A stretch of DNA of 64,000 bases from Bispira polyomma (GCA_965649765.1 OZ287752.1:13020001-13084000); one strand, 5' to 3'; shown: positions 2,040 to 63,949, numbered from the stretch's first letter. Made by a program: numbers and translations. Notes: generated by a model from the letters alone, not told the origin.

Positions 2040-2549
2040 TCAGGACCTCAAATGATGCTTCAATAATGATGATTGGTGTTCCAAGTTAAAAACTTTCAGT
2101 GGTCTGTAGTAAGTAAACACATGACTTGAAGTAGCTAGACTAATCCGCCCAAGTTTGTTGATGTCACTTTTAGGTAAACCAGAATCAGAAACTAGGGTCA
2201 TTAAATTTCTGGGTAAGATGTAGAAAGTAGAGCCAGAATCGTAAGGACTTTCATAGTGAGTACTCACTGATACTTCTGCATATATTACTGACCTTTATGT
2301 TGATGTAGAGTGATTAAGCATATTTGTTTCTGCAATGAATACACATATGTGCACTTGTTAATGTGTGAGTAATATTGATCAGTTAAGACAATATATGTTA
2401 TAATCTTTACCAATCTTAAAATTTCTAATAAAAACACTAATAAATGAAACCACTATAGACATTATTAGATGAACCATAAATTATAGGTTATTATATATTA
2501 ATTACTCACCACTGAAAAGTGTATACCAAAACAGCCATTGGACCATCAT
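2040..2549 (-). pseudogene. IgSF receptor copy A' (signal exon plus truncated, degenerate Ig1)
   Basis: Signal exon 2510-2549 (MMVQWLFWYTLFS, donor GTGAGT). Ig1 remnant about 2040-2296 has acceptor CAG>CAT and Cys>Ser. It joins directly to sequence matching the 3' flank of copy B (1850-2040 vs 14940-15190). Confidence 0.8.
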
Positions 2550-5500
2550 ATTTACTTGTTAAGATATTATAGAAAATTATTCATATTATTAGCATACATA
2601 CGTCAATGTTCCTCGATGTGTGTGGTACATGTATTATGTTATATGTGGAACAAATAAGGAAATTATCCATGATCCAGGGCGCCTTTATGTCAATAGGAAT
2701 ATAAGGAGGGCAACTAATATACTTGACTGCCTGATATCTAAACATATGTGTATATATTCTGTGTTTACAATACAATAGTCTATTTCTTACAGAAATTAAA
2801 GAACGAAACCACATTTTTTGTTTCCCCTTTGCAAATATTAACAGTTTAGATTTTGCAAAAAAAACTTTACTTTTTAATATTATTACTTTTTATATTATTA
2901 ATACTCTTTATTACTGAGGATGAGAAGTGATCATCCATTTTGATTGTTAGGGTTCTGAGAGCCAGATAAGATCTAATGCAATCAAGACAGTTTTATTTAG
3001 TCCAAACTAGTGTTTTAGGGCATAAAACATAAATCGGTCCATATCTAAAGGAATAGTCTTTAAATTATTTAATCTCATGAAACATTAGTAATACAAGAAG
3101 TTTGTAATAATAGTGAAGACACTGCAGATAAATAAATGTTCAGCTTCAATAAAAGTAACAATGAAGAAAGTTTTATTTGCTACCACCTATGATTTGTATA
3201 ATGATGTCATACATGTGTGCACTATTCAGCTGTTAGAAATAGTAAAAGGTTGACAACTTAGCACACACATGCCTTGTGCACTTCAAATTTAGTGTATTCA
3301 GGTTCGTTGAAAACATTGTAAATTTCTTTTTCAATTATGGACTGAGAATCTTTTTAGCAGGTTAGATTTGGCCTTTGATTCTTCCCTCAAGGTCAAGTGG
3401 CTTATAAATTGCTCATTATGGGTCATTCCCATTAGAAAAACATTTAAGATTTGACCCTCCATCAAGATAAAATGACTGTCTCCAATAATGTAAGGCCCTT
3501 AGAAAAAAATTATACAACAAAGTATGCAGATTATGAATCACAAATGTAATCTAATCTAATAAATTTAGTCATAGCACTTAATCTAAAAAAAGTCAGTAAA
3601 ATTTCACTAAAAGTAGGATTTAAATAAAATTTAGTAAACTATAAGGATGATACAACCAGTGTTAATATTGTCAGATTAATAAACTGGCCATTTCAATCCA
3701 TCACAGTTCTTTACTTTTGTATTAATATACTCAAAGCCCTGGACAGCTATAAATGGCTTAATGTCATTTATAGACAGGGTACACAGTAGACTCCAGTCCA
3801 GTTATTAATTAGGTACATGCAATATGTTATCACAAAAATGTTTCTCACATCGAAGTATTTAAAGTTCCTTTCATTTAGTACATACACAACTTAAGTTTTG
3901 TTCTTCTATACATCTGTAGGTTTCATGCAGCAGATCCTCAGTTTATGGTTACATATGTCACTTGCTGCAATGACAATGTTATACACATTTAAAGTATCTG
4001 AATAAAAAGTTAAGTTAAAATCAATTCAAACTATTCTTTGCACAGGACGTTATGACATTTGGATATAGTTATTTTAGGAGTATCAATTATTTAATGGCCA
4101 TACCTTTAAATCTGCATACTCAGCTGGTGGTGTTGGTTCTTCCGGTTTTTCATCTCATAGTTGCCGATTCCATGTGTAGATGTTACATTCTCATATGTTG
4201 TTGGACTTTGATTCTTAAAAATATGTCAAAATTAAATAACAACATGTCATTGCATTACATTGCATAAAGTCGTGTCAGCAATTTGGTTCTGGCTCCTTCT
4301 CAACAAAACAGTCAGTATAATTAGGGCAACTGTGAGTAAACCAACCATGATAGACAGGGCTGCTATTCCTGCTATTAGCCTGGTGTCTTTCCTTATAACA
4401 AAGATCTTCAGAAGGGGCTGAAAAAGGAAATTAAAATAAAGCTTACAATTCTAAACAAAAATCTGCAAGTACCAAGTGGAAAGGTAAAAACAAATGTCCA
4501 AGATCACAACTACAAATGATAACAATTACAGTCAGGGGTCAAAACTGTTGACCATATGTACCTGAAAAGGTTCCTGGTCACATCTTGGGTTTTTAAATTC
4601 CAAGACCCTTTTTTTCTAGATACAATCACAAAACATTTAAAAGATGCAAACAGAATAGACATTACATAAGTTCTAAAAAATTTAATTTATATTTGACTCT
4701 TGCGAAACATACCTCTATCCAATAACTCCAGTGAAAAACTAACAGGCTGTTGAATACCATTAGTCACAGTAACTGTATACTCTGTGTAGTCTTCTATTTG
4801 TACAGTATTTATCACAAGTTGTGAAATAAATATTTTTTTTTTTTTGAATTTACACCATCAGTAATACGTGATGCACCCATTTTGCTCCAGATAAAAGCTG
4901 CTTCAAGGTCAATGATTTCCGGAAAAGCTCTCACTGTGACATTAAGAGTGACTTGTTGACTTAGTCCAGCATAGAAAACTAAATCATCAGTGACAAGGAG
5001 TGGTGGATCTGAAGGTAGAAAAATATAAATCTAGTACAGGAAATTGTAAAAACAATCTGTATCTCTTCTTTTTTACTTCCACTGCATTCCCTGCAGTACA
5101 TCTACATAATTACTCGCAATATACAGCAATCTGTTTATCTCCTGTATCACTCCCCACTGTATTCCCTGCAGTACGCTTATAAGTCCCTGCATCAGTGTAC
5201 ACTGTACTCTCTATCACCAGTTCTATGTTCTCATGCTGGTCTGGTAGAGCCTGAGATGTGGCATCTTCATATTTAGATTCAAACTCCCATAACTGGCTGG
5301 TGATTTCCTCAGGGTTACCAACCTCAATGTTACAGTTAATAACAAGCTCTGATCCTTCTTCTATGGTGTCTGATGCACTTTGAGCTGATACGTCCGGAGG
5401 ATCTGAAACACAGAAGTAACATTTGATTAAAAAAACATTTAATTACATATCAAATATAGTAATGATAACATTTGAAATGATGAGGTTAGAATTTCTCAAA

Positions 5501-5555
5501 ATATAGATAATAGAATTTTTTCTGGCATTTAATGGCATTTTAATCTATAACTTAC

Positions 5556-5852
5556 ATCCAACATCCAGTGTTACTGTATCCCTCACTGTTGACTGCCCAG
5601 TAACATAACACTTCGCAACTTTGTTGTTCAATGTTCTGTCCACTGTCACTTCCAACACACTTCTCCTTGTCTTTGTATTACACATCCCCACCTCTTCACT
5701 GTCACTAGTAGAACTGACACTGTTCTCTCCTACAGTCCACTCCACATCCGCAGTTGGTTCAGCCTCATTAGTCACACAGGTGATGGTCACTACTGTGCTC
5801 TCAGAGACTAGATCAGAGGGAAACTCGGTCATTGTGATATTGGAGGCTTGAA
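5556..5852 (-). CDS. Ig domain exon (Ig5, copy A), open frame
   Basis: VTITCVT..VEW..AKCYV Ig signature; AG/GT boundaries; phase 1-1; 297 nt. Confidence 0.75.
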
Positions 5853-6897
5853 CTGTTAGATATAAAGAACTTAAAAACATGTTTTCTAGTGAACTTCATT
5901 GTCCATTCTTAAACCTGCTATTTCTGATTGATTTATGCTGAACAAAGTAAAATATATTTGAAATTCATATCTCATACAACAACAGTACTTTTTAAGAGTA
6001 CCTTATTGCGAAACATATTGTGACCAATACACGAGTATGAGGCCACTAAATTTAATTGTGATATACACTATTCAAAACTCAAAGGATCAGTTTATGGATG
6101 ACATTCCCTGTGCTTTAAAAAATTTTCAAAATATATTGACCCAGCCTTATTTATAACGACAGTTTTAGTAATTGAGAAGAGAATAGTTACTTAAGTTGAA
6201 CATAATATAACAGAATGTAACTTTTTATACAAATTTGTCAGACATCACATATAATGTTCATAAATCGAGAATGAAGAACACTAATATGTAAAAGCTCCAT
6301 GTTTCTCCTTATGGAGTTAGATCAGGTGATGAAGTACTTGTTTTGACCAGCGAATACAATACCGCTAATGATAAATGGAATATACTGTCAAAAATGAATC
6401 GTAGTCAGAGATGTGGAAAATTTCTCTAAAATTACAGAGCATGTAGATGAGTGTAAACAATTTTGGTGAAATTAACATTTGATTTATTTGTGAAGGGTTT
6501 CTTATGGTTTTGGATTGTATGTACCTATTAAGAAAAGTACAAACAGTGTTTTGGTTGTGTTCCAACTGTAATACCAGATGAGATTCTCGAAACCACTGTA
6601 AGACTTTTGCTGGTGCATTTGAATGTCTTGCTTACATATATCATAGCAATCTCAATGAAAACCTCATTGAAAACTTTAATGCACATTTAGGGATTGTGAA
6701 ATTTACACAACTTTGTTAAGTGCTATTGTGCTCAATATTTTCGTAAGACTTTTAATTCAAGGGCGTTGCAAAATATCTTAACAATTAAATTAACTTTGTG
6801 TAATTAATGACATTTCTACAATCATTTTAGTTGTCATTAATGTATAAAATTTATAATTCATTGTTTAGGTACTGAATAATGTAAGACTGTTACTCAC

Positions 6898-7191
6898 ATT
6901 TGACAGTGTAATATTTTGTGTCTGATTCTATAAAGTAGCTCAGTTTGTCTGTGTCTGAAGAAGTAGCTGTACAGTAACACAAGAGTCTATTGATTTCCCT
7001 CTCCATTGTTATTGTCTGTACCAAATTGTTCCTCACAGACTCTCCCACTTGTACTGTGTCTGTACCCTCTTCTCTGTACAAACTGATTACAGGTCCAGGG
7101 TTTCCATCTGCTGTACACGTCAACTCTCGTGTGTCTCCTTCTTCTGGGTCTGGACTGGAGTTCGCAGTGATTGTTACTGTGTCTGGTGAAT
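6898..7191 (-). CDS. Ig domain exon (Ig4, copy A), open frame
   Basis: ELTCTADGNPGP..CYCTA; AG/GT boundaries; 294 nt. Confidence 0.75.
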
Positions 7192-7432
7192 CTAAAAGTT
7201 TAAACCAATACACCTATTTACTGTTTGTGATAGAAAACCGAACACCAGCAAATAAATTAAATTTCTAGCATGAATATTAAACAGAACACTATGGTATGCT
7301 TATGAACATAAAGACAATATTACATCAGGAAAACATCTCATAACAGTTTATGGTAAAAAAATCAAATCACACTCATTCAGTCAGTCTGAAATTCATGTTT
7401 TACTGTATAATATTTTAACAGACCAAACTTAC

Positions 7433-7726
7433 ACAATACTCTAATTGTCAGCCTTTCAGATTCCACATCAAATGTCCACCCTGAGTACAGATTATTGTCA
7501 TCAGCTCTACAGTATAACTGGGCACCATTATCATCCTTGTCAACAGTAAGTTGGTACTCAACTATTTTGGCTGTCACCTGTTTTAGATGTGTAGCTACTC
7601 CCTGTCTGTACAACCTCAGTCTACCTACAGGATTACTCTCTACTTTACAGGTCAAGGTCAACAGGGTATTCTTGTTCACTGTTGAAGATGGTGAGACTTG
7701 CGGTTTACTCAGTGATGATGGTATAT
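7433..7726 (-). CDS. Ig domain exon (Ig3, copy A), open frame
   Basis: LTLTCKVESNP..DDNGAQLYCRA; AG/GT boundaries; 294 nt. Confidence 0.75.
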
Positions 7727-10387
7727 CTAAAATATATATATGCAATAAAAACCCCTTTTAGTAGAACTCTATCAAGTCAATTGGCCTTATTTATTTATTC
7801 TTTACGTTTACATATTTTTAACATGGAATTTCTCTGAAACTAAGGTTATCTAACTTACCTTACTAACAGTGACATTTACTAATAAGTTAATCTATATGAA
7901 AAGCTTATACTTCTTAACATTGAACATACATTTGTACAAACACATATATATTGCTGAATGGTACAGGTAACAGAAGTCGATATGTACTTAAACAGTCCAA
8001 CCCCTTTAACTCAGAAGGACCAGGAGTAACATAAACAAATAAATTGATCAACAATAAACCATCATGCCTGTGAAGAGCTCCTTTAGACGGTACTACTTTA
8101 CTTTTGTGGCCTTATATTCAAGGTATGAGTAAGATATTTGTATTTTGTTTCATACAAATAATATAAAATGACATATATTTAATAATGTACTGTACATTTT
8201 AAGTGTGATATCGATATTTATTTTTGGAAAAGGAATCACATTACTCACTTGTAAACATAAAGGTGTTTTGGTTTTTTGTTTATAAAATAACATAATAAAA
8301 AAGGCTTTTCTGTCAGAGTGGTTTTCAAATGGTGTGACATTAAACAGAATAATTCTTATATGGCTGTCTAATGACTTTATAGCAAATTAATAACAGTTTT
8401 TTCAATTTATTGGGATATCCACTTAAGAATCATTTTAAAGTTTCCATCAGTATATAGACCACAAATTAAATTTTCTAGATGAAGTATCATTTATTGCAGA
8501 TGCATTGTGTGTTTATGTTACTAAACCCTTAAGCATAAATTACCACTTAAATTTCCAGGGTAGATTTCAACATAAAAGGATATTGGTTTAAGAGAGTCGT
8601 ACTTAAAGGGTTTTGACTGTATATACAAAAAAAAACTACCACTTCTATACTTACAGTACAAATCCAATGTTTCAGTGTTTGATGTTTTCACTACTTTTAT
8701 TGGTCTTTCACCCCAAGTCAGTTCACACTGTACTCCTTGACCTTGCTGACCATGGTTAAAGTTCAGTGTCTGTGTATAAGTCACTGTATGAGTCAGTCCA
8801 TTACTTTCCTCACTCTCTGTCTCAACACCTCCACTGTAGTACCCACTGCCTACTTGTACTCTGAAGTCTGTCTACTCTTTACCTGGATAGATGGAGGACA
8901 CTCTACACTTGATAGATTTGGGTACACCCTCAATTACATTACCTATGGTAGTGAGGCTCACAGAATCCGGGGCATCTAGAAGTATAAAAAAAGTAAATAT
9001 GTTAACCATTATAACCATGTTTTAACAAACAGATGTAATGATTGATAACTGTATTTAAATGAGAACAAGCTTTAGCAAATGATAAATTAGGTGGTTATAT
9101 TTTGTTTAACTCTCAAAAAAAATTTAAGAAATCATTTAGATTTGGTATTTATAAATATAGGCACAATTGTAAGTTAACTTGGTTTAAAAACTAAATAAAA
9201 AAATATCTTCCTTGGGTGGTAGTATCTTTCAGTGCTGATATTATGTATAGTCAGTCTATGTGACGTGTCTGTGTAAGTCCAAGTCACATCTCTGTTTTGA
9301 AAGGACCTCGTTACAGTTCGTTACCAGGCACAACTGCTTTAGAGAAAAGTAACACTTCATTGTTTGTCTGACTGTTGTACCAACTGATATCATACAATTC
9401 ATCTTCACTGAGTCCATGTTCACATACAAGAGTAATACTCTCATCATTCAGCACATAGTAGGTAGACCCATCTCTGTAGTCTGATTCATAGTGGGTTGTC
9501 AGACTGATTTCAGCAAAAATGACAGATAGTAGAGACAAAACTGCAAATATGAATTTCAAATATTTCAGGCTGATACAAATTTATACTGAACTGAGCCAAT
9601 TAAAATGAGTTGTTCCGAGAAACTTTGTTTGCTAATAAATATATATAAGGCATAATTTGTTACAATAAATGTGTTCCTGGAATGTCCATATTTTTGTTTC
9701 AGCTGAAATGTGTTTAATGTTTAGATATGTTAATGTTTGACAAGAACCACACATTTCATACAATTTTCTATGTTAGGAAGTGTGGCTATTATTAAGTTTG
9801 TGACTGGTTTATACAATTATTAAATATATACTTTATTTAAATTGAAATCTAGAATAATAAATTAGCATCTGTAAAAGTGTCACACATGTTTAATTTTAAA
9901 AAATGTGTTTGTGTGAATGGGTTTCCTTTTGTATAAAGTATGAAGTTAGCTAAATAAAAGTTGAATAAATAAACCATGAATTTACAAGTAAATCTATAAT
10001 TGCACTGAAAACATGTACTCACTTATTGAAATTATGTATTGATAATCTCCACACATTTTTGCTATGAATCCATTACCAATATATAACTCATATAATACCT
10101 TTAAACATATGTATATTTCTTGTACAACAAGTACTTCCTTGTATGCATTATATACAGGAAAATCTTTGTGGGTCGAGTGTCATGTGATTTCTCTATTCAA
10201 AAAAGGGTTTTTGAAATACAGTATATTTACAATGCCCTTGTGTAACGGCATAATAAACGTCCTATTTTATTATGCAATAGGTTTAAAAAAAAAGCACATG
10301 TGTCAATACCACTTGGAAAAGCGGTCTACGTAACTTTTTAATATTGTGATTTAATACAGTTTTTAAGGAATATTTTATGATATTGTA

Positions 10388-10490
10388 CACCTCTGTGTGG
10401 GTTCGCCTCCCACAAGTGACAAATGCTCTGGGCCTGTCCTAATATGACCCTAGGTGTTGAACAGGACGTAAAACTCTGAACTTTGACTTT
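10388..10490 (+). mobile_element. SINE fragment
   Basis: B-box-like GGGTTCGCCTCCC and 3' segment CCTAATATGACC..GGACGTAAAAC resembling the SINE end at 27370-27415. Confidence 0.45.
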
Positions 10491-11369
10491 ATAACATTTA
10501 TGATACTTGTGCTTGCATTTAAATAGTCCATTCTATGTTGACTACTGCTTGTCAGAATTACTAGTTTATCAATGTCTTTCCATGTGAGTGATGTACTTCA
10601 CTCCACTACACGTTACTGTGAGGACTGCCATAAACGGGCCATAAATCTCATTTCTGTGCCATAGCTGGACAGATAGTATCGCACCTTAACCATGTCATAA
10701 ACATGAACTATGAAGGTAGTTTGTGTTTGCATTGTCACTGGTTAACATTTACCTGTGACCTGTCTTGTGTCAAATGTCGTCTGATTTTGGTTATTTCTCT
10801 ATCAGTGTTCCTTAAGTTTTGAAAATCTTTACACCACAGGGTCGAAGTTCTAAAATTTTTGTAATTTCCTGATCAGCCAAAACTTCTTTCAAGGTTAGAA
10901 CCAAGGGCCTTGGACAACCCCGCCTAGCAGGGGTAAGTCCAGCCTCTCAGCGCCCTTATTCTACTCTGGCACCCCAGTGGTTTGCTCAGTGGAGGGATAA
11001 AAGCAGCCTGGACCCCGCCCCCACACGGCCCAAGGTTTAACCAACCCAGATCTAACTGGGCCCTTATTCTTAGTGTTATATCGTGAATCAGTCTATTTCT
11101 AGCTGTGGTAAGGGAGGTGGTGGGATGCTTAAAATATTTTCTGATGCTTTCATGTCATTCAATATGGGGTCCCTCAAAAAGCGGGAATAAAGCTACAGGA
11201 GGAATAATCTGATTGGTCAGTCTATGGATGGACAGAACTTGCTTAGCATAGCTGTGTGTAATTCACACATTTAAGGTAGAGGTACAATAATTGCTATGAG
11301 GACTGAAGCAGTAGTACCTTAAAGTATCCTACTAGTCACAGTCCCCATGCTTGTAAGTCAATTAATTAT

Positions 11370-12150
11370 TAAAATAGAAGTCCCTTGATACTTTTGGGCG
11401 ATTTTCCGTGAATCGCCCAATTGACTAGATACAGTCACAGACCCCTTGCAGTTAATACACTCTAGAATTGTCAATATCTGTCAGATTTGAATCATTTAAA
11501 CATTAATTGAAACCTTATGCCATATACAATCCATATATATTAGCGTTTAAAGTGTTATTTGTATAGAAACATTATAATTTATCAAAATAGAAGTCCCTTA
11601 ATACTTCTGGGCGATTTTCCGTGGGTTGCCTAATTGACTTAATACAGTGACAGAGCCCCTGCAGTGTATGTACTGAAGAACATTTGAGGCGATTTCCAGT
11701 GGAGCGCCCAATAGACTTGATACAGTGACAGAGCCCCTGCATTGAATACACTGTGATATCTTTAATAGTTGTCTGATTTTTATAATTTAAACACCAATGG
11801 AAACCTTATGTCATATACAATCCATATATATTAGTGTTTAACGTGTTACTTGTATAGAAATATTATAATTTATTAAAATAGAAGTCCCTTACTAATTCTA
11901 GGCGATTTTCTGTGGATCACCTAAAAGACCCTGCAGTATAGTATATACTCTGGAACATTTTAGGCGATTTTCCATGAATTGCCCTATCCACTTGATAAAG
12001 TGACAGAACCTCTGCATTAAATACACTGTGATATCTTTAATATTTGTCTGATTTTTATAATTTAAACACCAATTGAAACCTTATTTCATATACAATCCAT
12101 ATATATATTAGCGTTTAAATTGTTATTTGTATAGAAATATTATAATTTAT
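11370..12150. repeat. Degenerate tandem repeat (about 210-290 bp units) within an unclassified insertion
   Basis: AAAATAGAAGTCCCTT at about 11371, 11584, 11876; GAAACCTTAT..CATATACAATCCATATAT at about 11510, 11800, 12075; recurring GCGATTT. Confidence 0.7.
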
Positions 12151-12623
12151 TAAGGCCTTAGTAACGTAAACACACAAATACATCACCGATGAATCATACT
12201 GCATTTGTGCAAGTCCATTTTTGCATATAGACACACTGTGGTCGCCTTAATATAATTCTATAGTGGTGTTTTTAACTATTTTTGGTATGCCGACACAATT
12301 ATGTTTGTGTTTAGTGTAAGATATAAGTATATTGATAAAAATTCTTTGTGTATGTTCTTTGATGTACAATAAATATATATTCACCCTATTGTTTACTTAT
12401 TTCTTGTAGCATCTGTACATGGCCCTCGTTATAAGGATAACAGTGGTGCTTAAATTATCAAAATCGGTTGATAAATAACGATTTTAGGTAACTTATGTGT
12501 CATCCTCCTTTCTTTATATATATATACTATGTATATGTATCTGTTATATATATATATTTAGTGTAAGATAAAAGTATATTGATAAAAAGTCTTTGTGTAT
12601 GTTCTTTGATGTACAATAAATGT

Positions 12624-12627
<4 letters not shown>

Positions 12628-12688
<61 letters not shown>
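12628..12688. repeat. (AT)n microsatellite
   Basis: Direct observation. Confidence 0.95.
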
Positions 12689-12691
<3 letters not shown>

Positions 12692-29610: not shown

Positions 29611-29655
29611 TTTAAAGAATATATTTTGACATAATATAATTTATGACATACTTAC

Positions 29656-53706: not shown

Positions 53707-54037
53707 GATAAATTCATTCATGATTTCATCGCCTGATTTTGGAGCTACACCATGAAATTGCTCCCAACATTCAAACATCTGCCTGTGAAAAAGTGTTAGG
53801 CATTTAAACCTCTGCGTTGGTGGTAATTTTTTCTTTATTTTACTTTTTCCTATATTTAATAGATACCAGGTTAAAAGTTGCCACTTTCCATGATTTTGAA
53901 CAAGCAAGTTTTTGATCCATTTTATTTTGGATACTATATTAATAGCAAATATATCAGGCATTTTAAGACCACCCATGGCATAGGGGGCAGTTATTGTACT
54001 CCTTTTAATTATTGCAGGTTTATTTTCCCAAAGAAAT

Positions 54038-56590
54038 TCAAATAAAATTCTGTCTATTCTTTTCAATATGTTTGTTGACAAAACATACTGACAGTAAATA
54101 GGTTATCTTAGGTAGAACTAGTGATTTTAATATTAAGATCTTGCCTTTCAAAGACAATTTCCTGCCTTTCCACATACTTATTGTAGTCCCCATTGCTTTT
54201 AGCTTATCTTCAAAATTCAGTGAAATTGATTCATTTAAGTTATATGAAAACCATATGCCTAAAGTTTTAAAGTTTGCTTGATTGATCATAATTTTGTGTA
54301 TTGACCTAGGTAATGTTACCTTTTGAAACCTCGATGTACCAATTGGAATTATTTTGCTTTTTTCAATGTTAATTTTTAATTCTGAACAGTTGTGAAATCC
54401 CTTGAGATACGAGATTAAATGAACGACAGAGTCAATATTACTTGTGAATACAGTTGTATCATCTGCTAATTGACAGATCTTATATTCCTTCTTTTCTATA
54501 TTTATTCCTTTTATCAATTTATTTTTTCTTATTGCAATGGCCATTATTTCTACAACTAGTAAAAACAAAAGGGCAGATATTGGACACCTTTGTCTTATTC
54601 CTCTACTTAACTGGAAATATTCAGAAAAGTCTCCATTATTACTTACACAAGATGCTATACTTCTATATAGTATTTTGATCCACTTTTGGAAATTCGGTCC
54701 AAAATTGAAAGCTTTTAATGTTTTAAAAAGAAAAGACCATTCCACACTATCAAAAGCTTTTTCAAAATCTAATAATACAATATAGCCAGGCAAATTTCTC
54801 AAATCTGTGTATGAAATAATGTCTTCTATCAATCTAATATTTTCCCCTATATATCTACTTTTTAAGTAACCTACTTGATCAGAATCAATTAATTTTGGTA
54901 GTACCAATTGTAGCCTATTTGCCAATGCCTTAGTTAAAATTTTGTAGTCAGTTTTGAGAATGCTTACTGGTCTGCAATTTTTTAAAAATCTTAAATCTTT
55001 GTTCGGTTTTGGAATAAGGTTAAGGATACCTCGCCGCTGATCATCTGTCAACAGTCCATTTTGAAAAGAGTACATAAAACTGTCAAACAATAAGTTTTGG
55101 ATATCTGGCCAAAAGAATTTATAAAAATTTGTTGTAAAGCCATCATTTCCTGGTGTTTTATCATTTTTTAAATGTTTCAGTGCTGCTGCAATTTCTGGTA
55201 ATTTTAGGGGACTATCACACATTTGTTTTTCAATATCATTTAAGTGAGGTATATGTTGTTGCTCTTTTATGAAATCTTCAATTCTTTCATCCTCCTCAGT
55301 GACCTTAGAAGAGTATAGGTTATAGTAGTACTTTCTTTCTTCTTCTAAAATGTCTTTAGGATTTGTTATTTCAGCTGTGTCATTACATATTAATTTCTTG
55401 ATATATTTGGAATTATAGTTTCTTTTCTCTAAGTTAAGGAAATACCCAGTATTCTTTTCTCTCATTTCAACCCATTGCACCTTTGACCTGAGGATTGCCC
55501 CTTCGGCCTTTTCATTTTGTAATTCTTCCCACTGAGTTTTTACCTCATTATATTCATGTATATTTTCATTGTTTTTTGCTATTTCCTTTTCTAAATTTTC
55601 TAGTTTTTGCTGTAAACACTTTTCCTTTTCTATTTTTTTCATTGCTTTTGATTTTGAATATGTTATAGTTATTGTTCTTATTTGGCACTTAACAAAATCC
55701 CATAATACATTTTTATTTTGTAAGTAGTTATCTGGGGTTATTTTGTGTAGTTCTTCTTTTACTAGACCAACATAAGTTTCATCATGTAGTAATTTGTTAT
55801 TAAATTTCCAATAACCTCTTCCTCTGCGCTGAGTATTAATAAGCCGCACCTTTAACTTAATTACACTATGATCTGATTTAAACCCTGGTTTAATAGAACA
55901 GTTTGATACCTGGGCTCCAACATTATTTGAAATTAAGAAGTAGTCTAACCTTGACTGAATCAAACCTGCCCTTGAGTTTTCTCTTCTTGTAAATTTTAAC
56001 TCTGTTGGATGTCTCAATCTCCATATATCACCTAAATTATACACTTCCATAATACTTATGATTCCTGATGCATATTTTGTCAAACTTTCATTACTTCCTC
56101 CCTTCTTGTCAAGTTTAGGATTCAGGTAGGTATTGAAATCTCCACCAATAATTACACTCTTATCAGCAAATTGTTCCAATAAATTTTTAAAGCTTTCCTA
56201 AAATTCTAACTGTAAATCCACCTTATCTTTTGTAGGTGCGTATAAATTTACTAGTAGAAATGGGTTTTCATCTATTTCACAATCTAGAATAATCATCCTA
56301 CCTTCATTATCTTTATGCACATTCAAAATTGTTAATTTGATATCATTTGGTATTAAAATTGCTACCCCTCTACTTTGATTGCTACCATGTGAGAAATATA
56401 TGTCTCCTTTCCATTCGTCTTATCACTTTTTTTCATCTAGTATAACAGAATGAGTCTCCTGTAACATTATCAGGCCTCGACGTTTGGACAGTAACCACTT
56501 AAAAACTGTGTTTCTTTTCTTAACATCCCTTAACCCTCTGCAATTAAAAGAGTTGACCGCTATCTCATCTTTATCTGAATACATCTTCAT
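54038..56590 (-). pseudogene. L1 ORF2 endonuclease/reverse transcriptase (main block; lesions at both ends)
   Basis: 713-aa open stretch 54038-56179 with APE C-terminus and RT; upstream APE start has a stop/frameshift. Confidence 0.88.
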
Positions 56591-57782
56591 TAAAGGACAT
56601 CCATATTATTTTCAATATCATTTGATACTGTAAGAGTTTTAAAACATGTTAGATACACTGATTTTTTTGCAATATATTGATCTCTATTTAGAGTCATACC
56701 AGGAACATAGAAGGACACGACACACAAATTACACATAACACACCTCAAATAACAGATACAAAGAACATAATACATGTAATAGAACATGTGACAACCAAAT
56801 ATCACTAAAAGTTACAGGTGTTTAGGCCTTTCTCTCACAAAAATAATTCTAAATAGAAAGCTAAATACATATAATAGTTTTCCAATTTTATATTTAAATT
56901 AACCTTTCATTACATGAATAAACTCATGCAGTTTCATTACCATAAATCTACCATGTACTTTCACGATACATTTCAACATGTAAATACTTTTTATCATGAG
57001 TACAAAGGTAAAAAAACATAGAAGTACTAGTTAAACAGTAACATATTATAAGCAAGTCAAGGGCCAGAAGTTTTAATTGTTTAAATATACTAGTACTTTG
57101 TTATCTGCCACCACTATTTTGTAATTATGGACATTTCTGTCAATGATACTTTATATGGTATGTACTATGTACATGTATATGCATAATCTACTAATTATAA
57201 TTCTTTAAGTATACACACATATTAGTAAGTTATTTCTCACCATACATTTTCACTTGTAAATCTATTTTATCATTAGTAAAAAGGTAAAAAAACTTCTACT
57301 GAATTGATGCAAAAGCACATAGAAATACTCGTTAAACAGTGACCAAGGCAAGCAAGTTAAGGGCCAGCATTTTTAATTGTTTAAATATACACACATATTA
57401 CTATGTTATCTGACACAATTCATACATTTTAACTATTTTGTAATTACTAAAATTTCTGCCACTGCTACTTTATGGAGTATGTATTACCGGTATATATATG
57501 CATGTTGGTAGCTTCACAATTTGTTCGCTGATATTTCAACATATGTACCATACAATTTTTCTTCTTTTTTTTTTTTAAACCGTTAGTATTTTGGTTAATA
57601 AAAGTATGTATTTAAATTTAACACTCATATTTACATATGAAAAAAAAAACTCGAGTACTCAAAGTTCGATGGTAGAATGAGAATCAGGACTTGAAAAATA
57701 AAAACAAATTGTAAAGTCATGATAGGAATAATCATAATAAACCACATAACCCAAAAAATATATATGTCTCTATTATAAACAG

Positions 57783-58821
57783 TTACATGGAAGGTTTTAG
57801 TTCAGTTCTTACTTTCATCAGTGCTCGTCCCATCAGGTTGTTTCCTTTCCATTGTCTTTTATCCCATAACTTTTTATCTACAAGTGAAAGTCTTTTAATA
57901 ACTACTGGGTCATGCTCAGATGATAGTTTGTGGATTAGATGTTGGTCTCCAAAACGCTCTGCTATCCTTATAAACAGAAATTGTTCCATGCTGCTATATG
58001 ATTCTCCATTCACAGTAAATTTACACTGATAATGATTAGACAGCATACTGTACTTTGAGTAAAATCCTGTTACATCTCCTCTAGTTGGTGTGAACAACTT
58101 GTTCAAATCCAGCTTACAGTGTTGTTTCTCCAAGTCCCCAACTTCATATACCTCCGATTTCACAATTAACTTGTCATCTTTGAGATATATTCCTCTTGTA
58201 TCTTTAATTTCCTGTTCAAAACCAGCTTTTACTGCCTCCATCACCGGGAACAACTTCTTTCTTGCCTGTGCAATTTCCAATGGTAAATCTTCCACAGTTG
58301 TTATGCCGTGTTGATTACTTATCTCCCTTTTTATCCTCAGGATGCTCAGTTTGTCCTTAAAATTTGCTAATCTTGCTATAACAGCCCTATTCTTCTGGTC
58401 TGGTGTACCTCCTAATCTATGAATTCTTTCAAAAGATCGCCAGTCCAGTCTTAGAGGCCCTTGAGAAACTTGTTGCAAATATCCAACATTTTCTGCTCTA
58501 AATTTTCATCTCTCTCTTCAGCTACACCCAGAAATCTGATATTATTTTTCCTTTGAAACAGTTCTAACTTATTAACTTGATCGTGAAGCTTCTTATTTTC
58601 CTCTTTCAACTGTGTAATTTCTTCTATGTTCTTTGTTTTTGTCTGACAAAAGTCTTTTTTAAGGATTCAAGATTGCTCTGAATAGGTTTTATATGCTCAT
58701 TTAACTTCTCATCCAATACTTCTCTTAAAATATACTTGAAATTTTCATTTTGATTTAATAATCCTTCAGGTGAAAATAACATATCTGTGTGTAGGCGTTT
58801 TGGGGTACAAGGTGTAGCCAT
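57783..58821 (-). pseudogene. L1 ORF1 (coiled coil, RRM, CTD) fused to a C-terminal NADAR/YbiA-like domain
   Basis: ATG 58821; FERIHRLG..RAVIARL..EDLPLEIAQARKKLFPV..LKDDKLIV (ORF1p); then FYSKYSMLSNHY..SMEQFLF..FGD..DP..KRL and WKGNNLMGRALMKVRTEL (NADAR). Two frameshifts upstream. Confidence 0.8.
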
Positions 58822-61800
58822 TTTAATAACCAATCATTTTAATAACCAAACACTATATTTTGCTTTTTTTCTGCACTACACTTCAATGACCTAATTCTTT
58901 GACAGTTCTAAAAAAGACTATTTGGCTGTACTGGGTCTTCCGCTATTGTTCATAGAAATCACAACATGTCATTCATTACCCTGCCTTCCCAAAACACTAT
59001 AACTTGTTTCTCTGCAGTGCACTCCAATGACCTAATACTTTGACAGTTCTCTGTGCTGAATAAAATTAAACAGAACACACTGGTATGCTTCTGCACATAA
59101 AGACAATATTACATCAGGAAAACATCTCATTTTATGGCAAAAAAAAAAACAAACCACACTCCTTCAGTCAGTATGTAATTCATGTTTCACTGTATAATTT
59201 TAACAGGCCAAACTTACACAATACACTAATTCAGCTTTTCAGACTCTACATCAAACGTCCACTCTGAGTACATATTATTGTCATCAGCTCTACAGTAAAA
59301 CTGGGCTCCATCATCATCCTTGTCAACAGTGAGCTCATACTCTAGTGTATTGGCTGTCATCTGTGTTAGATGTGTAGCTACTCCCTGTCTGTACAACCTC
59401 AGTCTACTTGCAGGATTACTGTCTACTTCACAGGTCAAGGTTAACAAGGTATTATCATTTACTGTTGAGGATGGGGATGCTATAGGTTTACTCACTGATG
59501 ATGGTACATCTGGAATTGAAATAGTACTTAACTGAAAAAGACACAATATTACCCTGAAAACCATTGTTAACATATTAATTAATATCAAAATTTGGTATAG
59601 GAAACTTTAAGTGCAAAAGGTATGGTTTAAGCCTTAATTAGCATTAAATGTGTAAATTAAGTAACAGTAACATAATAAAAGTTTGTTGTGGACGAGATAG
59701 CCACATTATTGCTGCTAATTTGTCACTATAATTACATCAGTGAGATCCTGACTAATAATGAACAACCATATTTAACATAACATAGATAACAAAGTCAATA
59801 GTGACACTAGAGCAAGTTACCATCTCTGAAAGAGGCGTGTTATTGCTGATGTGTATGCGTGCCATCAGTAAATCAAAGCATCAGTCACACAGTCAGGGCA
59901 ATTTCATATGTGCTTATCTAAGAAATGCACTGATTTTTCTTTTGCAAACAAGAATTTGAAAAGGAAAAAAATTAGACATTGTCTCAATTTAATACCGATG
60001 TAGACCTACTCTAGCTACTCCACAAACCACATCAAATCGGATATTTCGTCCAGCGTGCTCAATAAAACCCTTTGATTGGGTGGAGGGCAGGAAATTTTCC
60101 ACTTGTTGACGCCTTGCTTGTTAACGTAAAAGTGAGGGTGCTTAAGGAAAGGTGGCAAAACCTTCTTCTAGGCGACCTGTGATTGGTCGCTATGCTAGTA
60201 AACAAAATTTGAGGTTATTTTACTTTAAAGCCCTAACTTTTGACGACTGACTTGTCATGCTGTCCGAACTGCAGTGACTTACACATTATGATTTTTAGTT
60301 AATCATAAAATAAAAGCTTTTATTTAAGAACTCCCATGAAAAGATATAGTAAGTACCAGTAAGTGACATATTAGATTGTGATTACACACCAACAAACACA
60401 AACCAAAAAAACTCTCCTACAACAGGAAAGCAATGTCCATGTATAGCAATGGACATGTAATACAATTCATTACATACTTACAGTACACATCTAGGGTTTC
60501 AATGTTTGATGTTTTCACTACTTCTATTGGTCCTTCACCCCAGGTCAGTTCACACTGTACTCCTTGACCATGCTGACCACGGTTAAAGCTCAGAGTCTGT
60601 GTATAAGTCACTGTATAAGTCAGTCCATTACTCTCCTTACTCTCTGTTTCAAGACCTCCAGTGTAGTACTCACTCCCTACTTGTACTCTGAAGTCTGATC
60701 TTTACCTGGATAGATGGAAGACACTCTACACTGGATGGTTTTGGTTACACCCTCAATTAAAATACCTATGTTCTGTACCATTGAACTCATACTCTACATC
60801 TCTCCCAATAAACTCACTCTGTAATGTACTCCTGTTCTCTTGCCCCCAGTAAATAAACACATGCTGTGAAGTAGCTCGATTATACCAGTCAAGTGTTATG
60901 ATGTCACTTCTAGTTAAACCAGAATCACAAACTAGGGTCATTGAGTCTCCGTGTAAGATGTAGAAAGTAGAGCCAGAACTGTAAGGACTTTCATAGTGAG
61001 TACTCACTAATACATCTGCATTTACTACTGACCTTTCTGAAATGACAAGTTTGTGTTATTAACCATATTTGATGGTTTCACTGAATACATGGGTAAATGT
61101 TGAGTACTTGACCAATATAAGACATGATTGATTGTTTACAAACAACAAAAGTTGCAATGTTTACCAATCGTAAAATTAACACTAATAAATGAAACACAAT
61201 ACACACTATCAGGTATGTTATAAATTACATGTTAATATATAATAATTACTTACCATTGAAAAGTGTCAGCAAAAACATCCACTGGATCATCATCTTTACA
61301 GGTAAAGAAATGATAAAGAAGTATATATCATTGGACTACATGCATACGTCCCTCACTATTTCTGATATATGTATTATGTTAAAAGTTAAGGAAGTTAAAT
61401 TTACAAGTACTAGATATTCATTCAAAGGGTACGTTATATTACAGCACGACTATCAAGAGGGCATATCTTATAACAAAATGCATGATATGTAATAGTAAAA
61501 CTACATGTCAATCGGTGTGTATGAACGAACCATGACAAAGCATTACAAAACAAGCTTGTCATCGTGAGTTAAAAAAACACAACACGAATAAAGTTTTACT
61601 ATTATTATACATTAGCTTTTATCACTATTATGCTTAAACTCGAACAAAATATAAGAAAAAAATCCCCCAAAGCCCTAAAATGGTTATCATTGTTAGTTTT
61701 GAAAACCTTCTGTCTGTTATTATGTCACAATGCAAGTTTAAAAAAGTTAGTACCCAAAGAATTAACTCCAAAATTATATTTAGAAAGGTATAAAAATCGA

Positions 61801-62395
61801 GTTTTATACTCCAAAATATAATTTTAGGTTTATATTTTATGTTAACCACACTTTCTAGCAACTTTCAGTCTGAAATATTGCGTAAGATTTACTGTAAGAT
61901 TTACCGTAGAAAATCTTGGAAATACTATGATGTTTATTATATATAGATAAATACCAAGTGGCACTACATTATGTAAACTTAATGTGTACGAGGGCCTTTA
62001 GGTTTTACATAATGTATGGGCCACATAGTGTTTATCTATTAAAAAGCCCAACTAAAATTACATTGTTGAATGAAGTGTAAACAAATTAAATTAAGAATGC
62101 TTGTTTAAATATTGTGTGATTTTAAAAAATTAATAGAAATGTCCATATACCATCGTAGTAGAGTGGCATATGTAGGGTGGTGTGCCAAATACATATATTC
62201 TATTTCTTACAAAGAATTGGATAAAGAAATAACATCTTTTGTTTCCCCTTTGCAAAAAATGTTCGCATTCAAACTAGCTTTTAATGAAAAACTTTACTTA
62301 TTAATATTATTATTTCTTTCATTATTTTCTTTACATGTTCATTAATTTCCAGATATCATATGTAATTCTTCTATCACTGTATAATACTGATAGAC

Positions 62396-63949
62396 ACAAT
62401 ACACTAAATCTCAACCTTTCAGACGTCATATCAAATTCCCATCCTGAGTGCAGATTATTGTCATCAGTTTCACAGTAAAGCTGGACTCCATCATCATCCT
62501 TGTCCACAGTGAGTTGGTACTCCAGTGTCTTGGCTATCACCACTGCTAGATGTGACGTCCTTCTAAGTCTGAACAACTTCAGTCTACCAGCAGGATTACT
62601 GTTTACTTCACAAGTCAAGGTCAGCAGAGTATTCTCATTTACTGTTGAGGATAGGGAGGCTGTAGGTTCACTCACTGATAATTGTACATCTAGAATTTAA
62701 CTAGTACGTAACTAAACAAGGCACAATATACCGCGAATACCATTATAAACCTATTAATCAACATCAAACTTTGGTGGAGCAAACCTTATGTGCAGAGGCA
62801 TGGTTGACCCCTTAATTACCATTTAATGTAAAGCATTTAACGGTAACATAAAAAATATTGTAATGAGCCACATTATTGCTGATAATTTCTGACTATAATT
62901 ACATCAGTGAGATCCTGACTAAGAATGAACAACCATATTTAACATAACAGAAAACAAAGTCAATAGTGACACTAGACTAGGTTACCGTCTCCAAACGAGG
63001 CGTGTTATTGCTGATGTTCTTGCGTATCATCAGTAAATCAAAGCATCAGTCAGGGGAAATTTCAAATATGCCAGAATCTGATTGTAGCCAATTGTTTGCT
63101 GGTTCCAGTTGATGTTTTGTGTACCTAATGTCTAGGCATACATTGTATCATAGTCAATCTATTCTCCCTTTATCTGGTATTCAAAGTGCTAATTGTGTTT
63201 TCTTCTGAACACTATCATTTATCTTCAATTTACCATTTTTAAATTCCAAATTCTAATCATGAAATGATACAAGTGTTGTCATATCTATATGCTTTTCATC
63301 ATAAAATAGGGACAGATCACACGTAAAACTTTATGGGCCGAGGAAGGCTCGTGCTAAAAATGTAACAACACTATAAGTTATAAGAAAAGTCCTTAGGACA
63401 AATGCATACCATGTACAGTTTGTTAAAAAGACTGACGTTCTCAGAAAAATGACATGAGTCTAGGGGACTTTAATGCCATATGTATACAATCTGCCTGACG
63501 TTTGGATGTGATAACACCCATCCAGCTGTATTGTTAACTGATACATAAGAAAAAGGCCTGAGAGCCATAAGTTGAGAGGCCCACTGCAGGAACTCAGACA
63601 GGAAAGCAATGTAATAGAATTCATGACATACTTACAGTACACAACTAAGGTTTCAGTGTTTGATGTGTTCACTAATTCTATTGGTCCCTCACCCTAAGTC
63701 AGTTCATACTGTACTCCTTGACCTTGCGGTTAAAGCTCAGTATCTGTGTACAAGTCACTGTATAAGTCAGGCCATTACTCACCTCACTCTCTGTCTGAAC
63801 ACCTCCACTGTAGTACTCACTGCTTACTTGTACTCTGAAGTCTGTCTGCTCTGTCCCTGGATAGATGAAGGACACTTCACACTCAATAGATTTGGGTGCA
63901 CCCTCAATTACAAAACCTATGGTAGTAACATTCACAGAATATGGAGCAA
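62396..63949 (-). pseudogene. IgSF receptor copy E (5' end outside window): Ig2 and Ig3 exons only
   Basis: Ig2 63636-63949 with deletions and Trp>TAG; Ig3 62396-62689 open; followed by sequence matching the upstream flank of other copies (62230-62320 vs 2810-2900). Confidence 0.8.

What the first reader, a model, noticed from the sequence alone, without database searches (positions are those of the whole stretch)
2040..63949. Birth-and-death cluster of Ig/FN3 receptors: candidate invertebrate immune or allorecognition locus
Seen: at least 7 same-strand tandem copies of a SP-7xIg-FN3-FN3-like-TM-tail gene, with one domain per phase-1 exon, each copy damaged differently, and dense TE invasion. 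Known: tandem IgSF arrays with pseudogenes, a variable N-terminal V domain and tyrosine-motif tails characterise vertebrate Siglec/KIR/LILR clusters and the Hydractinia Alr complex; true nephrin is a conserved low-copy gene. Inference: a lineage-specific, rapidly turning-over recognition receptor family rather than a nephrin orthologue.
Basis: partly seen in the sequence, partly recalled or inferred. Interest (0 to 1): 0.75.

Follow-up and report, generated by a model that had tools for sequence, protein, structure and literature searches.

The report
Decayed array of Ig-receptor pseudogenes
This stretch of an invertebrate chromosome holds seven broken copies of a cell-surface receptor gene from a very large family, riddled with jumping genes; it shows how fast the family gains and loses copies, but nothing here tells what the receptors recognise.

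Summary
The window carries seven same-strand (minus) tandem copies or fragments of one IgSF receptor gene. Each domain sits in one symmetric phase-1 exon, and every copy is broken in its own way. About 60% of the window is dispersed repeats and TE genes.

Only two copies (plus one fragment) have 7 Ig exons. At least two others are the 5-Ig form that dominates the local array.

The unit is SP, V-set D1, D2, 3-5 further Ig, FN3, a beta-sandwich, TM, and a tail with TTYENV and a C-terminal VTYETI (ITIM pattern).

The local array has 14 copies in 209 kb. Only one, 21.6 kb outside the window, is intact (831 codons). Genome-wide there are at least 70 FN3-exon matches, 65 of them on this chromosome.

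D1 evolves fastest (dN/dS about 1.0, against 0.3-0.8 elsewhere). Its variation sits in the C-C'-C'' and F-G segments. Exon-sized patches of 97-99% identity on an ~85% background show conversion or unequal crossover.

Read-derived contigs from two samples reproduce one whole copy, so it is no assembly artefact. No RNA run was listed, so immune or allorecognition function is untested.

The scan has already reported this family on other DNA of this genome.

The parts
62396..63949 (-). Copy alpha (its E1 and D1 lie beyond the window end). D2 is at 63636-63949, with a 7-nt deletion and a stop. Ig3 is at 62396-62689, with a -1/+1 local frame slip. The copy is then truncated: at 62188-62326 Ig3 abuts the intergenic stretch that normally lies upstream of E1.
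44864..61293 (-). Copy beta (7-Ig form).
- E1 61254-61293.
- D1/D2 fused by a ~310-nt deletion and out of frame, 60482-61036; D2 also carries a -4 deletion.
- Ig3 59218-59509, with a -2 deletion.
- A 10.25-kb TE-filled intron.
- Ig4 48517-48810 and Ig5 47942-48238, both open.
- Ig6 47538-47814, with a -8 deletion.
- Ig7 47126-47428, FN3 46253-46546, FN3-like 45517-45786, TM 45258-45418, T1 45036-45146 and T2 44864-44890, all open.
48911..59161 (.). TE block inside beta's Ig3-Ig4 intron. It holds pogo (DDE_1 and HTH_Tnp_Tc5, 50495-51623, minus strand), a HIRAN ORF (52107-52511, plus strand), a LINE (RVT_1 and endonuclease, 54038-56179, minus strand) and a NADAR-domain ORF (57783-58478, minus strand).
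38226..42995 (-). Copy gamma. E1 at 42956-42995 is intact. D1 to Ig3 are replaced by a LINE (RVT_1 ORF at 40584-41231) and other repeats. Only the first ~93 nt of an Ig4 exon survive, at 38226-38318, with its upstream intron to 38465.
31296..38225 (+). GC-rich (41-45%) dispersed repeat with several plus-strand ORFs. The genome search gave 4,643 first-look candidates and 105 matched pieces on many contigs.
29656..30849 (-). Copy delta. E1 30810-30849, D1a 30221-30607 and D2 29656-30051 (with a 75-nt in-frame duplication) are all open with AG/GT sites. All later exons are missing. Homology ends about 20 nt past the D2 donor, where a plus-strand ORF (29320-29634) begins; from its sequence it looks like a LINE tail, though Pfam was not run on it.
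20682..29636 (.). Repeat block between epsilon and delta. It holds a Penelope-type GIY-YIG ORF (23187-23588, minus strand), an ORF that looks like an RT fragment (25641-25970, plus strand; Pfam not run) and LINE-tail-like ORFs.
15502..20531 (-). Copy epsilon (5-Ig form).
- E1 remnant 20498-20531, start codons lost by a 9-nt deletion.
- D1a 19916-20292, with AC in place of the AG acceptor and a -10 deletion.
- A D2 fragment at about 19655-19741.
- Ig3 18464-18760, with a stop and frameshifts.
- Ig6 fused to the end of Ig7 by a deletion, 17802-18054.
- FN3 16935-17209, with a -19 deletion.
- FN3-like 16210-16479, with a TAG stop.
- TM 15925-16067, with a stop.
- T1 15665-15775 and T2 15502-15528, both open.
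9586..15186 (.). Mostly dispersed repeats between zeta and epsilon. The 10232-12880 piece gave 4,389 first-look candidates and 149 matched pieces genome-wide.
3938..9540 (-). Copy zeta (7-Ig form with the other D1 type).
- D1b 9146-9540, with a TAA stop, degraded 3' part.
- D2 8655-8975, with an in-frame TAG.
- Ig3 7433-7726, Ig4 6898-7191 and Ig5 5556-5852, all open.
- Ig6 5118-5402, open but with a GC donor and the second Cys lost.
- Ig7 4713-5008, with a -7 deletion.
- FN3 and FN3-like exons deleted.
- TM 4256-4417, with a +1 insertion and the donor lost.
- T1 4104-4213, with a -1 deletion.
- T2 3938-3964.
Contigs from two samples reproduce this stretch.
2043..2549 (-). Copy eta. E1 is at 2510-2549. 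The 5' half of D1a is at 2099-2296 and has lost its acceptor and the first Cys. The rest of the gene lies outside the window at -674 to -5130 and carries many lesions.

Best explanation
The window is a decayed stretch of a tandem array of a lineage-restricted IgSF receptor gene family.

What the intact unit is (shown). One intact unit lies just outside the window and another 4.4 Mb away. It has 11 or 13 exons: signal peptide, V-set D1, D2, three to five further Ig domains, FN3, one more beta-sandwich, TM, and a short tail with four tyrosines. The tail includes TTYENV and a C-terminal VTYETI.

What the window holds (shown). All seven copies here are pseudogenes or fragments. The processes that shaped them are visible in the sequence:
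- tandem and block duplication;
- exon-scale gene conversion or unequal crossover;
- deletions that fuse neighbouring paralogous exons;
- small frameshifts and stop codons;
- TE insertions that truncate genes or swell their introns.

What is inferred.
- Intact members are type I surface receptors.
- Their membrane-distal V-set domain is the diversifying ligand-binding tip.
- Their phosphorylated ITIM-pattern and ITSM-pattern tyrosines recruit SH2-domain phosphatases to dampen a signal.
- The dead copies in the window make no receptor, but they still exchange sequence with live neighbours.

Whether the family serves immunity, allorecognition or cell adhesion is not known.
For: Exon structure and phases.

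Integrity census of the 254 kb around the window: 14 copies, of which 1 is intact. The intact copy is 2,496 nt with no junction stop codons.

Family size and chromosome-bound clustering: 70 FN3-exon matches, 65 on C5; 26 D1 matches, 22 on C5; at least 150 Ig5-type matches.

Domain assignments:
- Ig and fn3 Pfam hits.
- The D1 model (pLDDT 70) matches V domains (VHH, TCR V, nectin-3 D1) at Foldseek E about 6e-6 and TM 0.55-0.6.
- D1 keeps the C...W...D-x-x-x-Y-x-C pattern in 14 of 14 sequences.
- The membrane-proximal domain is all-beta and matches FN3 and Ig sandwiches at Z about 8.

Tail motifs.

Selection:
- dN/dS is 1.03 for D1a, 0.32 for FN3, 0.37 for Ig7 and 0.41 for T1, at dS about 0.2.
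- Within D1a, the C-C'-C'' plus F-G segments give 1.44 against 0.40 for the rest.

Mosaicism:
- Zeta and beta are 95-99% identical over window 2399-5060 but 78-91% over Ig6 to D2.
- The nearest relative of the intact neighbour changes from exon to exon: 98.6% to a copy 100 kb away in Ig3, 97-98% to another copy in Ig7 and FN3-like, and 93% to a third in D1.

TEs.

Not an artefact: contigs of 3 runs from 2 samples cover all 30 bins of zeta at 97% likeness or better, with no indel or joint and only 3 base differences.
Against: - No RNA run was listed, so neither the intact neighbour nor any window copy is shown to be expressed.
- The tail motifs are short patterns. Binding of any phosphatase is not shown, and the ITSM consensus is recalled, not taken from a call.
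- dN/dS was computed partly on pseudogenes, which pushes values towards 1.
- The D1 sub-regions were chosen after I had seen the amino-acid variability. The permutation result (5 of 200) is therefore biased in my favour.
- The D1 model is only of moderate confidence.
- Logan contigs show presence, not absence, so an intact allele of zeta in some individuals is not excluded.
- Delta's three exons are fully open, so 'all dead' rests on the missing downstream exons rather than on lesions in the exons that remain.
Confidence: 0.75

Rival explanations
1. The locus is a working invertebrate immune or allorecognition receptor complex, like KIR/LILR, Siglec or Hydractinia Alr, and the window is part of its active repertoire.
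For: - Tandem IgSF array with pseudogenes.
- V-set tip with the fastest protein evolution, concentrated in the C-C'-C'' and F-G segments.
- ITIM-pattern C-terminus conserved even in dead copies.
- Two deep D1 types (38-43% aa identity to the D1a query) swapped onto otherwise similar genes.
- The Alr family shares the same layout: V-set D1, one exon per domain, an Fn3-like spacer, ITAM/ITIM tails, and 12 pseudogenes among 41 gene models (PMC9546547, passages read).
Against: - None of the 7 window copies can encode a full receptor.
- There is no expression, tissue, polymorphism or ligand evidence, and no RNA run was listed.
- The two samples differ at only 3 bases over 5.7 kb of zeta, which gives no sign of unusual polymorphism there.
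- The same sequence features fit adhesion families.
Confidence: 0.3
2. The family is a cell-adhesion or neural-wiring recognition code (nephrin/Kirrel-, IgLON- or Dpr/DIP-like). It has expanded in tandem, and the tyrosine motifs serve adhesion signalling rather than immune inhibition.
For: - The body of the protein is a chain of C2/I-type Ig domains plus FN3.
- The best solved-structure sequence match of the Ig5 exon is SYG-2, the worm nephrin homologue, at E 6.4e-5.
- The weak best matches of Ig3 and Ig7 are NCAM2 and neurotrimin/Dscam.
- Diversifying tips also occur in homophilic adhesion codes.
Against: - The pseudogene load is very high: 13 of 14 local copies. From recall, not from any call here, that seems unusual for wiring genes.
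- dN/dS of D1 is about 1, and 1.44 in the C-C'-C'' plus F-G segments.
- All the matches to adhesion proteins are weak. Only SYG-2 is below E 0.01.
Confidence: 0.3
3. Some window copies still make products. Delta could make a secreted V-C two-domain protein, because reading through its D2 donor reaches a stop after 14 codons. Beta could make an exon-skipped isoform, because all domain exons are symmetric phase 1-1 and skipping the three damaged ones keeps the frame.
For: - Delta's E1, D1a and D2 are open with AG/GT sites.
- Beta keeps 9 open exons, including TM and both tail exons.
- Exon symmetry is shown.
Against: - There is no transcript evidence.
- Delta's D2 carries a 75-nt internal duplication that probably disturbs the fold.
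- A skipped beta isoform would lack the V-set tip.
- Both ideas are untested possibilities.
Confidence: 0.1
4. The array or its lesions are assembly artefacts, either collapsed or expanded repeats or indel errors.
For: Three of zeta's small lesions sit in short homopolymer runs.
Against: - Read-derived contigs of 3 runs from 2 samples match zeta across all 30 bins, with no indel and no joint. Unique pieces of 1,651 and 938 nt match at 0 differences.
- The copies differ from each other by 5-25%, so they are not duplicated assembly blocks.
- Stop codons and kb-scale deletions are not homopolymer errors.
- Only zeta was laid; the other six copies were not checked against reads.
Confidence: 0.03

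Closest known systems
Hydractinia Alr family in the allorecognition complex (PMC9546547; passages read)
   Same: - Tandemly clustered IgSF genes with many pseudogenes (12 of 41 models there; 13 of 14 local copies here).
- V-set domain 1.
- Each extracellular domain and the TM encoded by a single exon.
- A membrane-proximal spacer with an Fn3-like fold.
- ITIM-pattern tails in some members.
   Different: - Alr proteins have 1-3 Ig-like domains, against 5-7 Ig plus a true Pfam fn3 domain here.
- Alr tails are highly diverse and often carry ITAMs. Here the tail is conserved (T1 dN/dS 0.41), with ITSM- and ITIM-type patterns and no ITAM seen.
- Homology was not tested, because I held no Alr sequence.
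- Allorecognition is shown genetically for Alr1/2; nothing functional is known here.
Vertebrate leukocyte-receptor-complex families (KIR, LILR) and CEACAM/Siglec clusters (PMC1193534 and PMC5112662: search listing and start of abstract only; the rest recalled)
   Same: - Birth-and-death tandem arrays with pseudogenes.
- Exon-per-domain, phase-1 organisation.
- Exchange of the extracellular part between paralogues.
- ITIM/ITSM-type tails.
- The fastest evolution is in the membrane-distal domain.
   Different: - No sequence relationship was found.
- The ectodomain is much longer, with FN3 plus an extra sandwich.
- No charged-TM activating partner was seen in this window.
- Expression in immune cells is unknown.
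- The host is an invertebrate. Earlier scan notes call it a probable segmented worm; I did not test that.
Nephrin / SYG-2 and Kirrel
   Same: A chain of C2-type Ig domains followed by FN3, TM and a tyrosine-bearing tail. The Ig5 exon's best solved-structure match is SYG-2 at E 6.4e-5, and it hits Pfam C2-set_2.
   Different: - 5 or 7 Ig rather than 8.
- A V-set tip.
- An extra membrane-proximal sandwich.
- Tens to hundreds of copies instead of a conserved low-copy gene.
- Different tail motifs.
It is not an orthologue.

Membership tests
Nephrin (NPHS1/SYG-2/Hibris-Sns) orthologue | Ectodomain of eight C2-type Ig domains plus one FN3 (architecture recalled) | tested here: not met
   Units have a V-set D1, D2, 3 or 5 further Ig, FN3 and one more beta-sandwich.
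Nephrin (NPHS1/SYG-2/Hibris-Sns) orthologue | Conserved low-copy gene | tested here: not met
   At least 70 FN3-exon matches and at least 150 Ig5-type exon matches in the genome; 14 copies in 209 kb around the window.
Nephrin (NPHS1/SYG-2/Hibris-Sns) orthologue | Significant sequence similarity along the ectodomain | tested here: inconclusive
   Only the Ig5 exon matches SYG-2 (E 6.4e-5, 72 residues). Ig3 and Ig7 have no PDB match below E 0.08. Full-length comparison was not done, because the joined model was left out.
Inhibitory IgSF receptor clusters (KIR/LILR/CEACAM/Siglec kind) | Tandem array evolving by duplication and loss, with pseudogenes | tested here: met
   14 local copies, 13 defective, each with different lesions; exon-scale mosaic identity.
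Inhibitory IgSF receptor clusters (KIR/LILR/CEACAM/Siglec kind) | Cytoplasmic ITIM, [I/L/V/S]xYxx[I/V/L] (definition as quoted in PMC9546547) | tested here: met
   VTYETI is encoded by T2 in 6 of the 7 local copies printed, and the seventh (zeta) has VTYVTI, which also fits. This is a pattern match only; phosphorylation and SHP binding are not testable here.
Inhibitory IgSF receptor clusters (KIR/LILR/CEACAM/Siglec kind) | Expression on immune cells and an inhibitory function | not testable with these tools
   No RNA run was listed for this organism.
Inhibitory IgSF receptor clusters (KIR/LILR/CEACAM/Siglec kind) | Sequence homology to a named vertebrate family | tested here: not met
   Pfam gives only generic Ig/fn3 models. 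The PDB sequence searches give no KIR, LILR, Siglec or CEACAM match.
Hydractinia Alr family | V-set domain 1 | tested here: met
   The AF2 model of D1a matches V domains with Foldseek probability 1.00, E about 6e-6 and TM 0.55-0.6. C36, W50, D101, Y105 and C107 are invariant in 14 of 14 sequences.
Hydractinia Alr family | Membrane-proximal spacer with an Fn3-like fold | tested here: inconclusive
   The model (pLDDT 76.5) is an all-beta sandwich. The best Z is about 8, shared by FN3 domains and Ig-like domains alike, and Foldseek gives nothing below E 0.001.
Hydractinia Alr family | Sequence homology to Alr1/Alr2; allelic polymorphism that controls fusion/rejection | not tested
Siglec | V-set domain with the sialic-acid-binding arginine (recalled) | not tested
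   No structural superposition on a Siglec was made.

The most novel reading that the evidence does not exclude
The dead copies are not just debris. The array may work as a germline exchange pool, in which pseudogene exons, especially the two deep D1 types and the variable C-C'-C''/F-G segments of D1, are copied into the few live inhibitory-type receptors. That would give an invertebrate a KIR/LILR-like, or chicken pseudo-V-like, way to renew recognition tips. The family would then be a true non-self or allorecognition system outside vertebrates, cnidarians and tunicates.
Probability: 0.15. Interest if true: 0.8.

Novelty: new member of a known kind. Interest (0 to 1): 0.45.

Why it matters
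Large, fast-turning-over IgSF receptor arrays with inhibitory-type tails are well documented in vertebrates, in Hydractinia and in Botryllus. My four literature searches found none described for annelids or other lophotrochozoans. Those searches cover only the held library, and supplements were closed.

If intact members prove to be immune or self-recognition receptors, this family would be an independent origin of that strategy. This window would then show its turnover in detail: block duplication, exon-scale conversion, exon-fusing deletions and TE truncation.

As it stands, the window documents gene death, not function.

Tried and rejected
- Pfam on D1, D2 and the FN3-like exon gave no relevant hit.
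- The ESM Atlas gave only V-set leads for D1 (score 0.95) and nothing usable for the FN3-like exon (score 0.85, recognition below threshold).
- The representative search with the FN3-like exon gave 12 hits. All are unnamed ORFs of about 100 aa, or doubtful repeat proteins, so no taxon or named relative came of it.
- P0001 is at most 48% identical to anything in this genome, so it comes from another species.
- PDB sequence searches of Ig3, Ig7 and a D2 profile gave only marginal matches. D2 matches antibody light-chain constant domains, best E 0.0013.
- I could not identify the first exon of the D1b-type genes.
- I did not use the search for homologous proteins (0 of 3). So I did not re-test the earlier notes' claim that the closest annotated relatives are brachiopod receptor kinases.
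- I did not test the organism's identity.
- I rejected the assembly-artefact reading and nephrin orthology (see the membership rows).

Full report
**What is in the window.** The window is G000:C5:13,020,001-13,084,000 of a 1.035-Gb, 75-contig animal genome with about 33% GC. An all-against-all comparison of the 350 stop-to-stop ORFs of at least 50 aa sorted minus-strand ORFs into about ten recurring exon families. DNA alignments of the copies, together with an intact paralogue 4.4 Mb away (L017), fixed the exon borders. The unit is:
- E1, 40 nt, encoding MMVQWLFLFAFFS, the signal peptide;
- D1, 387 or 405 nt;
- D2, 321 nt;
- Ig3, 294 nt;
- optionally Ig4 (294 nt) and Ig5 (297 nt);
- Ig6, 285 nt;
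- Ig7, 303-306 nt;
- FN3, 294 nt;
- an 'FN3-like' exon, 270 nt;
- TM, 161 nt;
- T1, 111 nt;
- T2, 27 nt including the stop.

Every domain exon has a length that is a multiple of three, sits between AG and GT, and is in phase 1-1.

**Domain identities.**
- Pfam finds Ig families on Ig3-Ig7 and fn3 on the FN3 exon. Only Ig_2 on Ig3, C2-set_2 on Ig5 and fn3 pass Pfam's own cut-offs. D1, D2 and the FN3-like exon get nothing.
- For D1, I aligned 14 paralogous exons. C36, W50, D101, Y105 and C107 are invariant. The AlphaFold model built on that alignment has mean pLDDT 70.3, and its best PDB matches are V domains (nanobodies, TCR V, nectin-3 D1) at Foldseek E about 6e-6 and TM 0.55-0.6. The Atlas search also points to V-set clusters.
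- The FN3-like exon models as an all-beta sandwich with pLDDT 76.5. It matches FN3 domains and Ig-like domains equally, at Z about 8, with nothing significant in Foldseek. 'FN3-like' is therefore plausible but not settled.
- A D2 profile matches antibody light-chain constant domains only marginally, best E 0.0013.
- The tail reads NQSPTTYENVTSTHGIGNYEMTKPEEPTPPAEYADLK followed by QVTYETIN-stop. VTYETI fits the ITIM pattern as quoted in PMC9546547. TTYENV fits the ITSM pattern as I recall it.

**The seven copies.** Reference-guided alignment and direct translation give the following, from high to low coordinates.
- **Alpha.** D2 has a 7-nt deletion and a stop. Ig3 follows, and the gene is then cut off and abuts the next gene's upstream region.
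- **Beta (7 Ig).** D1 and D2 are fused by a deletion of about 310 nt and are out of frame. D2 carries a -4 deletion, Ig3 a -2 deletion and Ig6 a -8 deletion. Its Ig3-Ig4 intron has swollen by 10.25 kb of TEs. The other nine exons are open.
- **Gamma.** Only E1 and the first ~93 nt of Ig4 survive. A LINE and other repeats fill the space between them.
- **Delta.** E1, D1 and D2 are fully open, D2 with a 75-nt in-frame duplication. Everything downstream is missing, and homology stops about 20 nt past the D2 donor.
- **Epsilon (5 Ig).** The start codons are deleted, and lesions sit in eight exons, including an Ig6/Ig7 fusion.
- **Zeta (7 Ig, D1b type).** There are stops in D1 and D2 and a -7 deletion in Ig7. 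FN3 and the FN3-like exon are deleted. TM has a +1 insertion and has lost its donor. T1 has a -1 deletion.
- **Eta.** E1 and half of D1 lie in the window. The rest lies upstream of the window start and carries many lesions.

So the count of seven and 'each damaged differently' are confirmed. The '7xIg' description fits only zeta and beta, plus gamma's fragment.

**TE load.** Only 23,285 of 64,000 nt align to an intact unit or to the Ig4-Ig5 segment. Another 38,378 nt lie in 18 other blocks longer than 300 nt. Pfam on ten large ORFs gave RVT_1 twice (once with an endonuclease domain), GIY-YIG, DDE_1, HTH_Tnp_Tc5, HIRAN and NADAR. Three ORFs had no hit. The two blocks I searched genome-wide returned 4,643 and 4,389 first-look candidates, with 105 and 149 matched pieces on many contigs.

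**Surroundings and genome.** I fetched 190 kb of flanks and annotated the resulting 254 kb.
- The local array has 14 copies or fragments between window coordinates -55.7 kb and +153.2 kb, all on the minus strand.
- Only one copy is intact, at -21,605 to -28,480 (C5:12,991,520-12,998,395). It has 11 exons, all with AG/GT sites, totals 2,496 nt and has no stop at any junction codon.
- Genome-wide, the FN3 exon has 70 matches, 65 of them on C5. Identity falls in tiers by cluster: 76-100% locally, about 68-79% at 17.0-17.5 Mb and about 35-52% at 18.3-19.7 Mb.
- D1 has 26 matches, 22 on C5.
- Ig5-type exons reach the 150-match list limit.
- Ig4-type exons have 9 matches at 74% identity or more, so 7-Ig forms also exist in other clusters.

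**Outside this genome.** The FN3-like exon found only 12 proteins at E of 0.001 or less among 1.84 billion representatives, the best at 45% identity. The ten I looked up are all unnamed ENA ORFs, nine of them of about 100 aa and several lying on the same 2.5-Mb contig. The best of them, P0001, is at most 48% identical to anything in this genome, so it belongs to another species that also has several copies. The family is thus restricted to a lineage but not to one species.

Named full-length relatives were therefore not sought.

**Evolutionary signals.**
- Among local copies, dS is about 0.2 for every exon, but dN/dS differs: D1a 1.03, TM 0.80, Ig3 0.67, FN3-like 0.65, Ig6 0.60, D2 0.55, T1 0.41, Ig7 0.37 and FN3 0.32. 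Most of the divergence therefore built up under purifying selection, and the lesions are comparatively late. Because pseudogenes are included, all the values are somewhat inflated.
- D1 comes in two deep types, a and b: D1b exons are only 38-43% identical in protein to the D1a query. Both types sit on otherwise similar genes.
- In nine intact D1a exons, amino-acid variation is concentrated in the C to C'' region and the F-G hairpin of the model, while strands B, D and E are conserved. dN/dS is 1.44 in those segments against 0.40 in the rest. I picked the segments after seeing the variability, so the permutation figure (5 of 200) overstates the support.
- Identity is mosaic. Zeta and beta are 95-99% identical from the next gene's E1 through T2, T1, TM and Ig7, but 78-91% from Ig6 to D2.
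- The nearest relative of the intact neighbour changes from exon to exon: 93.3% to one copy in D1, 98.6% to a copy 100 kb away in Ig3, and 97-98% to others in Ig7 and the FN3-like exon. This is what gene conversion or unequal crossover among array members, live and dead, would produce.

**Reads.** One search for runs returned three runs from one study and two samples. None is recorded as RNA. I laid them on the whole zeta copy (5,701 nt) at 97% likeness or better. Their contigs covered all 30 bins in all three runs, with no insertion, deletion or joint and only three base differences, all in one contig of the second sample. Unique pieces of 1,651 and 938 nt matched without a difference. Zeta and its lesions are therefore real and present in both samples. 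The other six copies were not checked against reads. Expression could not be tested.

**Literature.** I ran four full-text searches combining annelid or lophotrochozoa, immunoglobulin (superfamily), ITIM, tandem or gene cluster, pseudogenes and expansion.
- They returned no description of such a family in annelids or other lophotrochozoans.
- A 2025 review of invertebrate IgSF (PMC11999971) names Annelida only once, in a list of phyla in its introduction (passages read).
- The nearest described analogue is the Hydractinia Alr family (PMC9546547; passages read).
- For Botryllus fester, NK-receptor clusters and Xenopus CEACAM I saw only the search listing and the start of the abstract.
- Supplements were closed and might hold gene lists that I could not see.

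**Verdict.** The window is a graveyard sector of a large, chromosome-bound IgSF receptor family. It is not a nephrin orthologue and not an artefact. 'Immune or allorecognition' is one of two equally open functional readings.

Earlier notes of this scan describe the same family on other windows of this chromosome, some with dead-kinase tails. None of those occur here.

Noticed in passing
outside the window: G000:C5:16,934,711-16,953,295 (+), C5:11,458,662-11,477,688 (+) and C6:14,474,691-14,476,127 (-): Runs of 4 to about 17 Ig5-like (C2-set_2) exons on one strand. Spacing is about 0.7-1 kb on C5 and about 390 nt on C6. One run lies downstream of a D1a exon at C5:16,928,793. These could be giant multi-Ig family members or cassette arrays of alternative exons.
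   Followed up: no
window 29656-30051 (-): Delta's D2 exon carries a 75-nt in-frame tandem duplication (25 codons), while the exon stays open.
   Followed up: partly
window 60482-61036 and 17802-18054 (-): Two independent deletions join neighbouring paralogous exons at short shared sequences: D1 to D2 in beta, and Ig6 to Ig7 in epsilon. This suggests microhomology-mediated deletion between domain exons.
   Followed up: partly
I did not examine whether they belong to the elements.
   Followed up: partly
window 38910-39184 versus 39710-39984: A perfect 275-nt inverted repeat (100% identity) lies between the Ig4 fragment and the LINE of gamma.
   Followed up: no
window 11390-12153: Internal tandem duplication of about 290 nt units (81% identity) inside a dispersed repeat.
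   Followed up: no
L017:3950-4300 (G000:C5:17,476,950-17,477,300): The otherwise intact 5-Ig reference gene keeps a decayed half of an Ig4 exon in its Ig3-Ig6 intron, with Cys changed to Tyr and the 3' half lost. The 5-Ig form may therefore derive from a 7-Ig ancestor by exon loss.
   Followed up: partly
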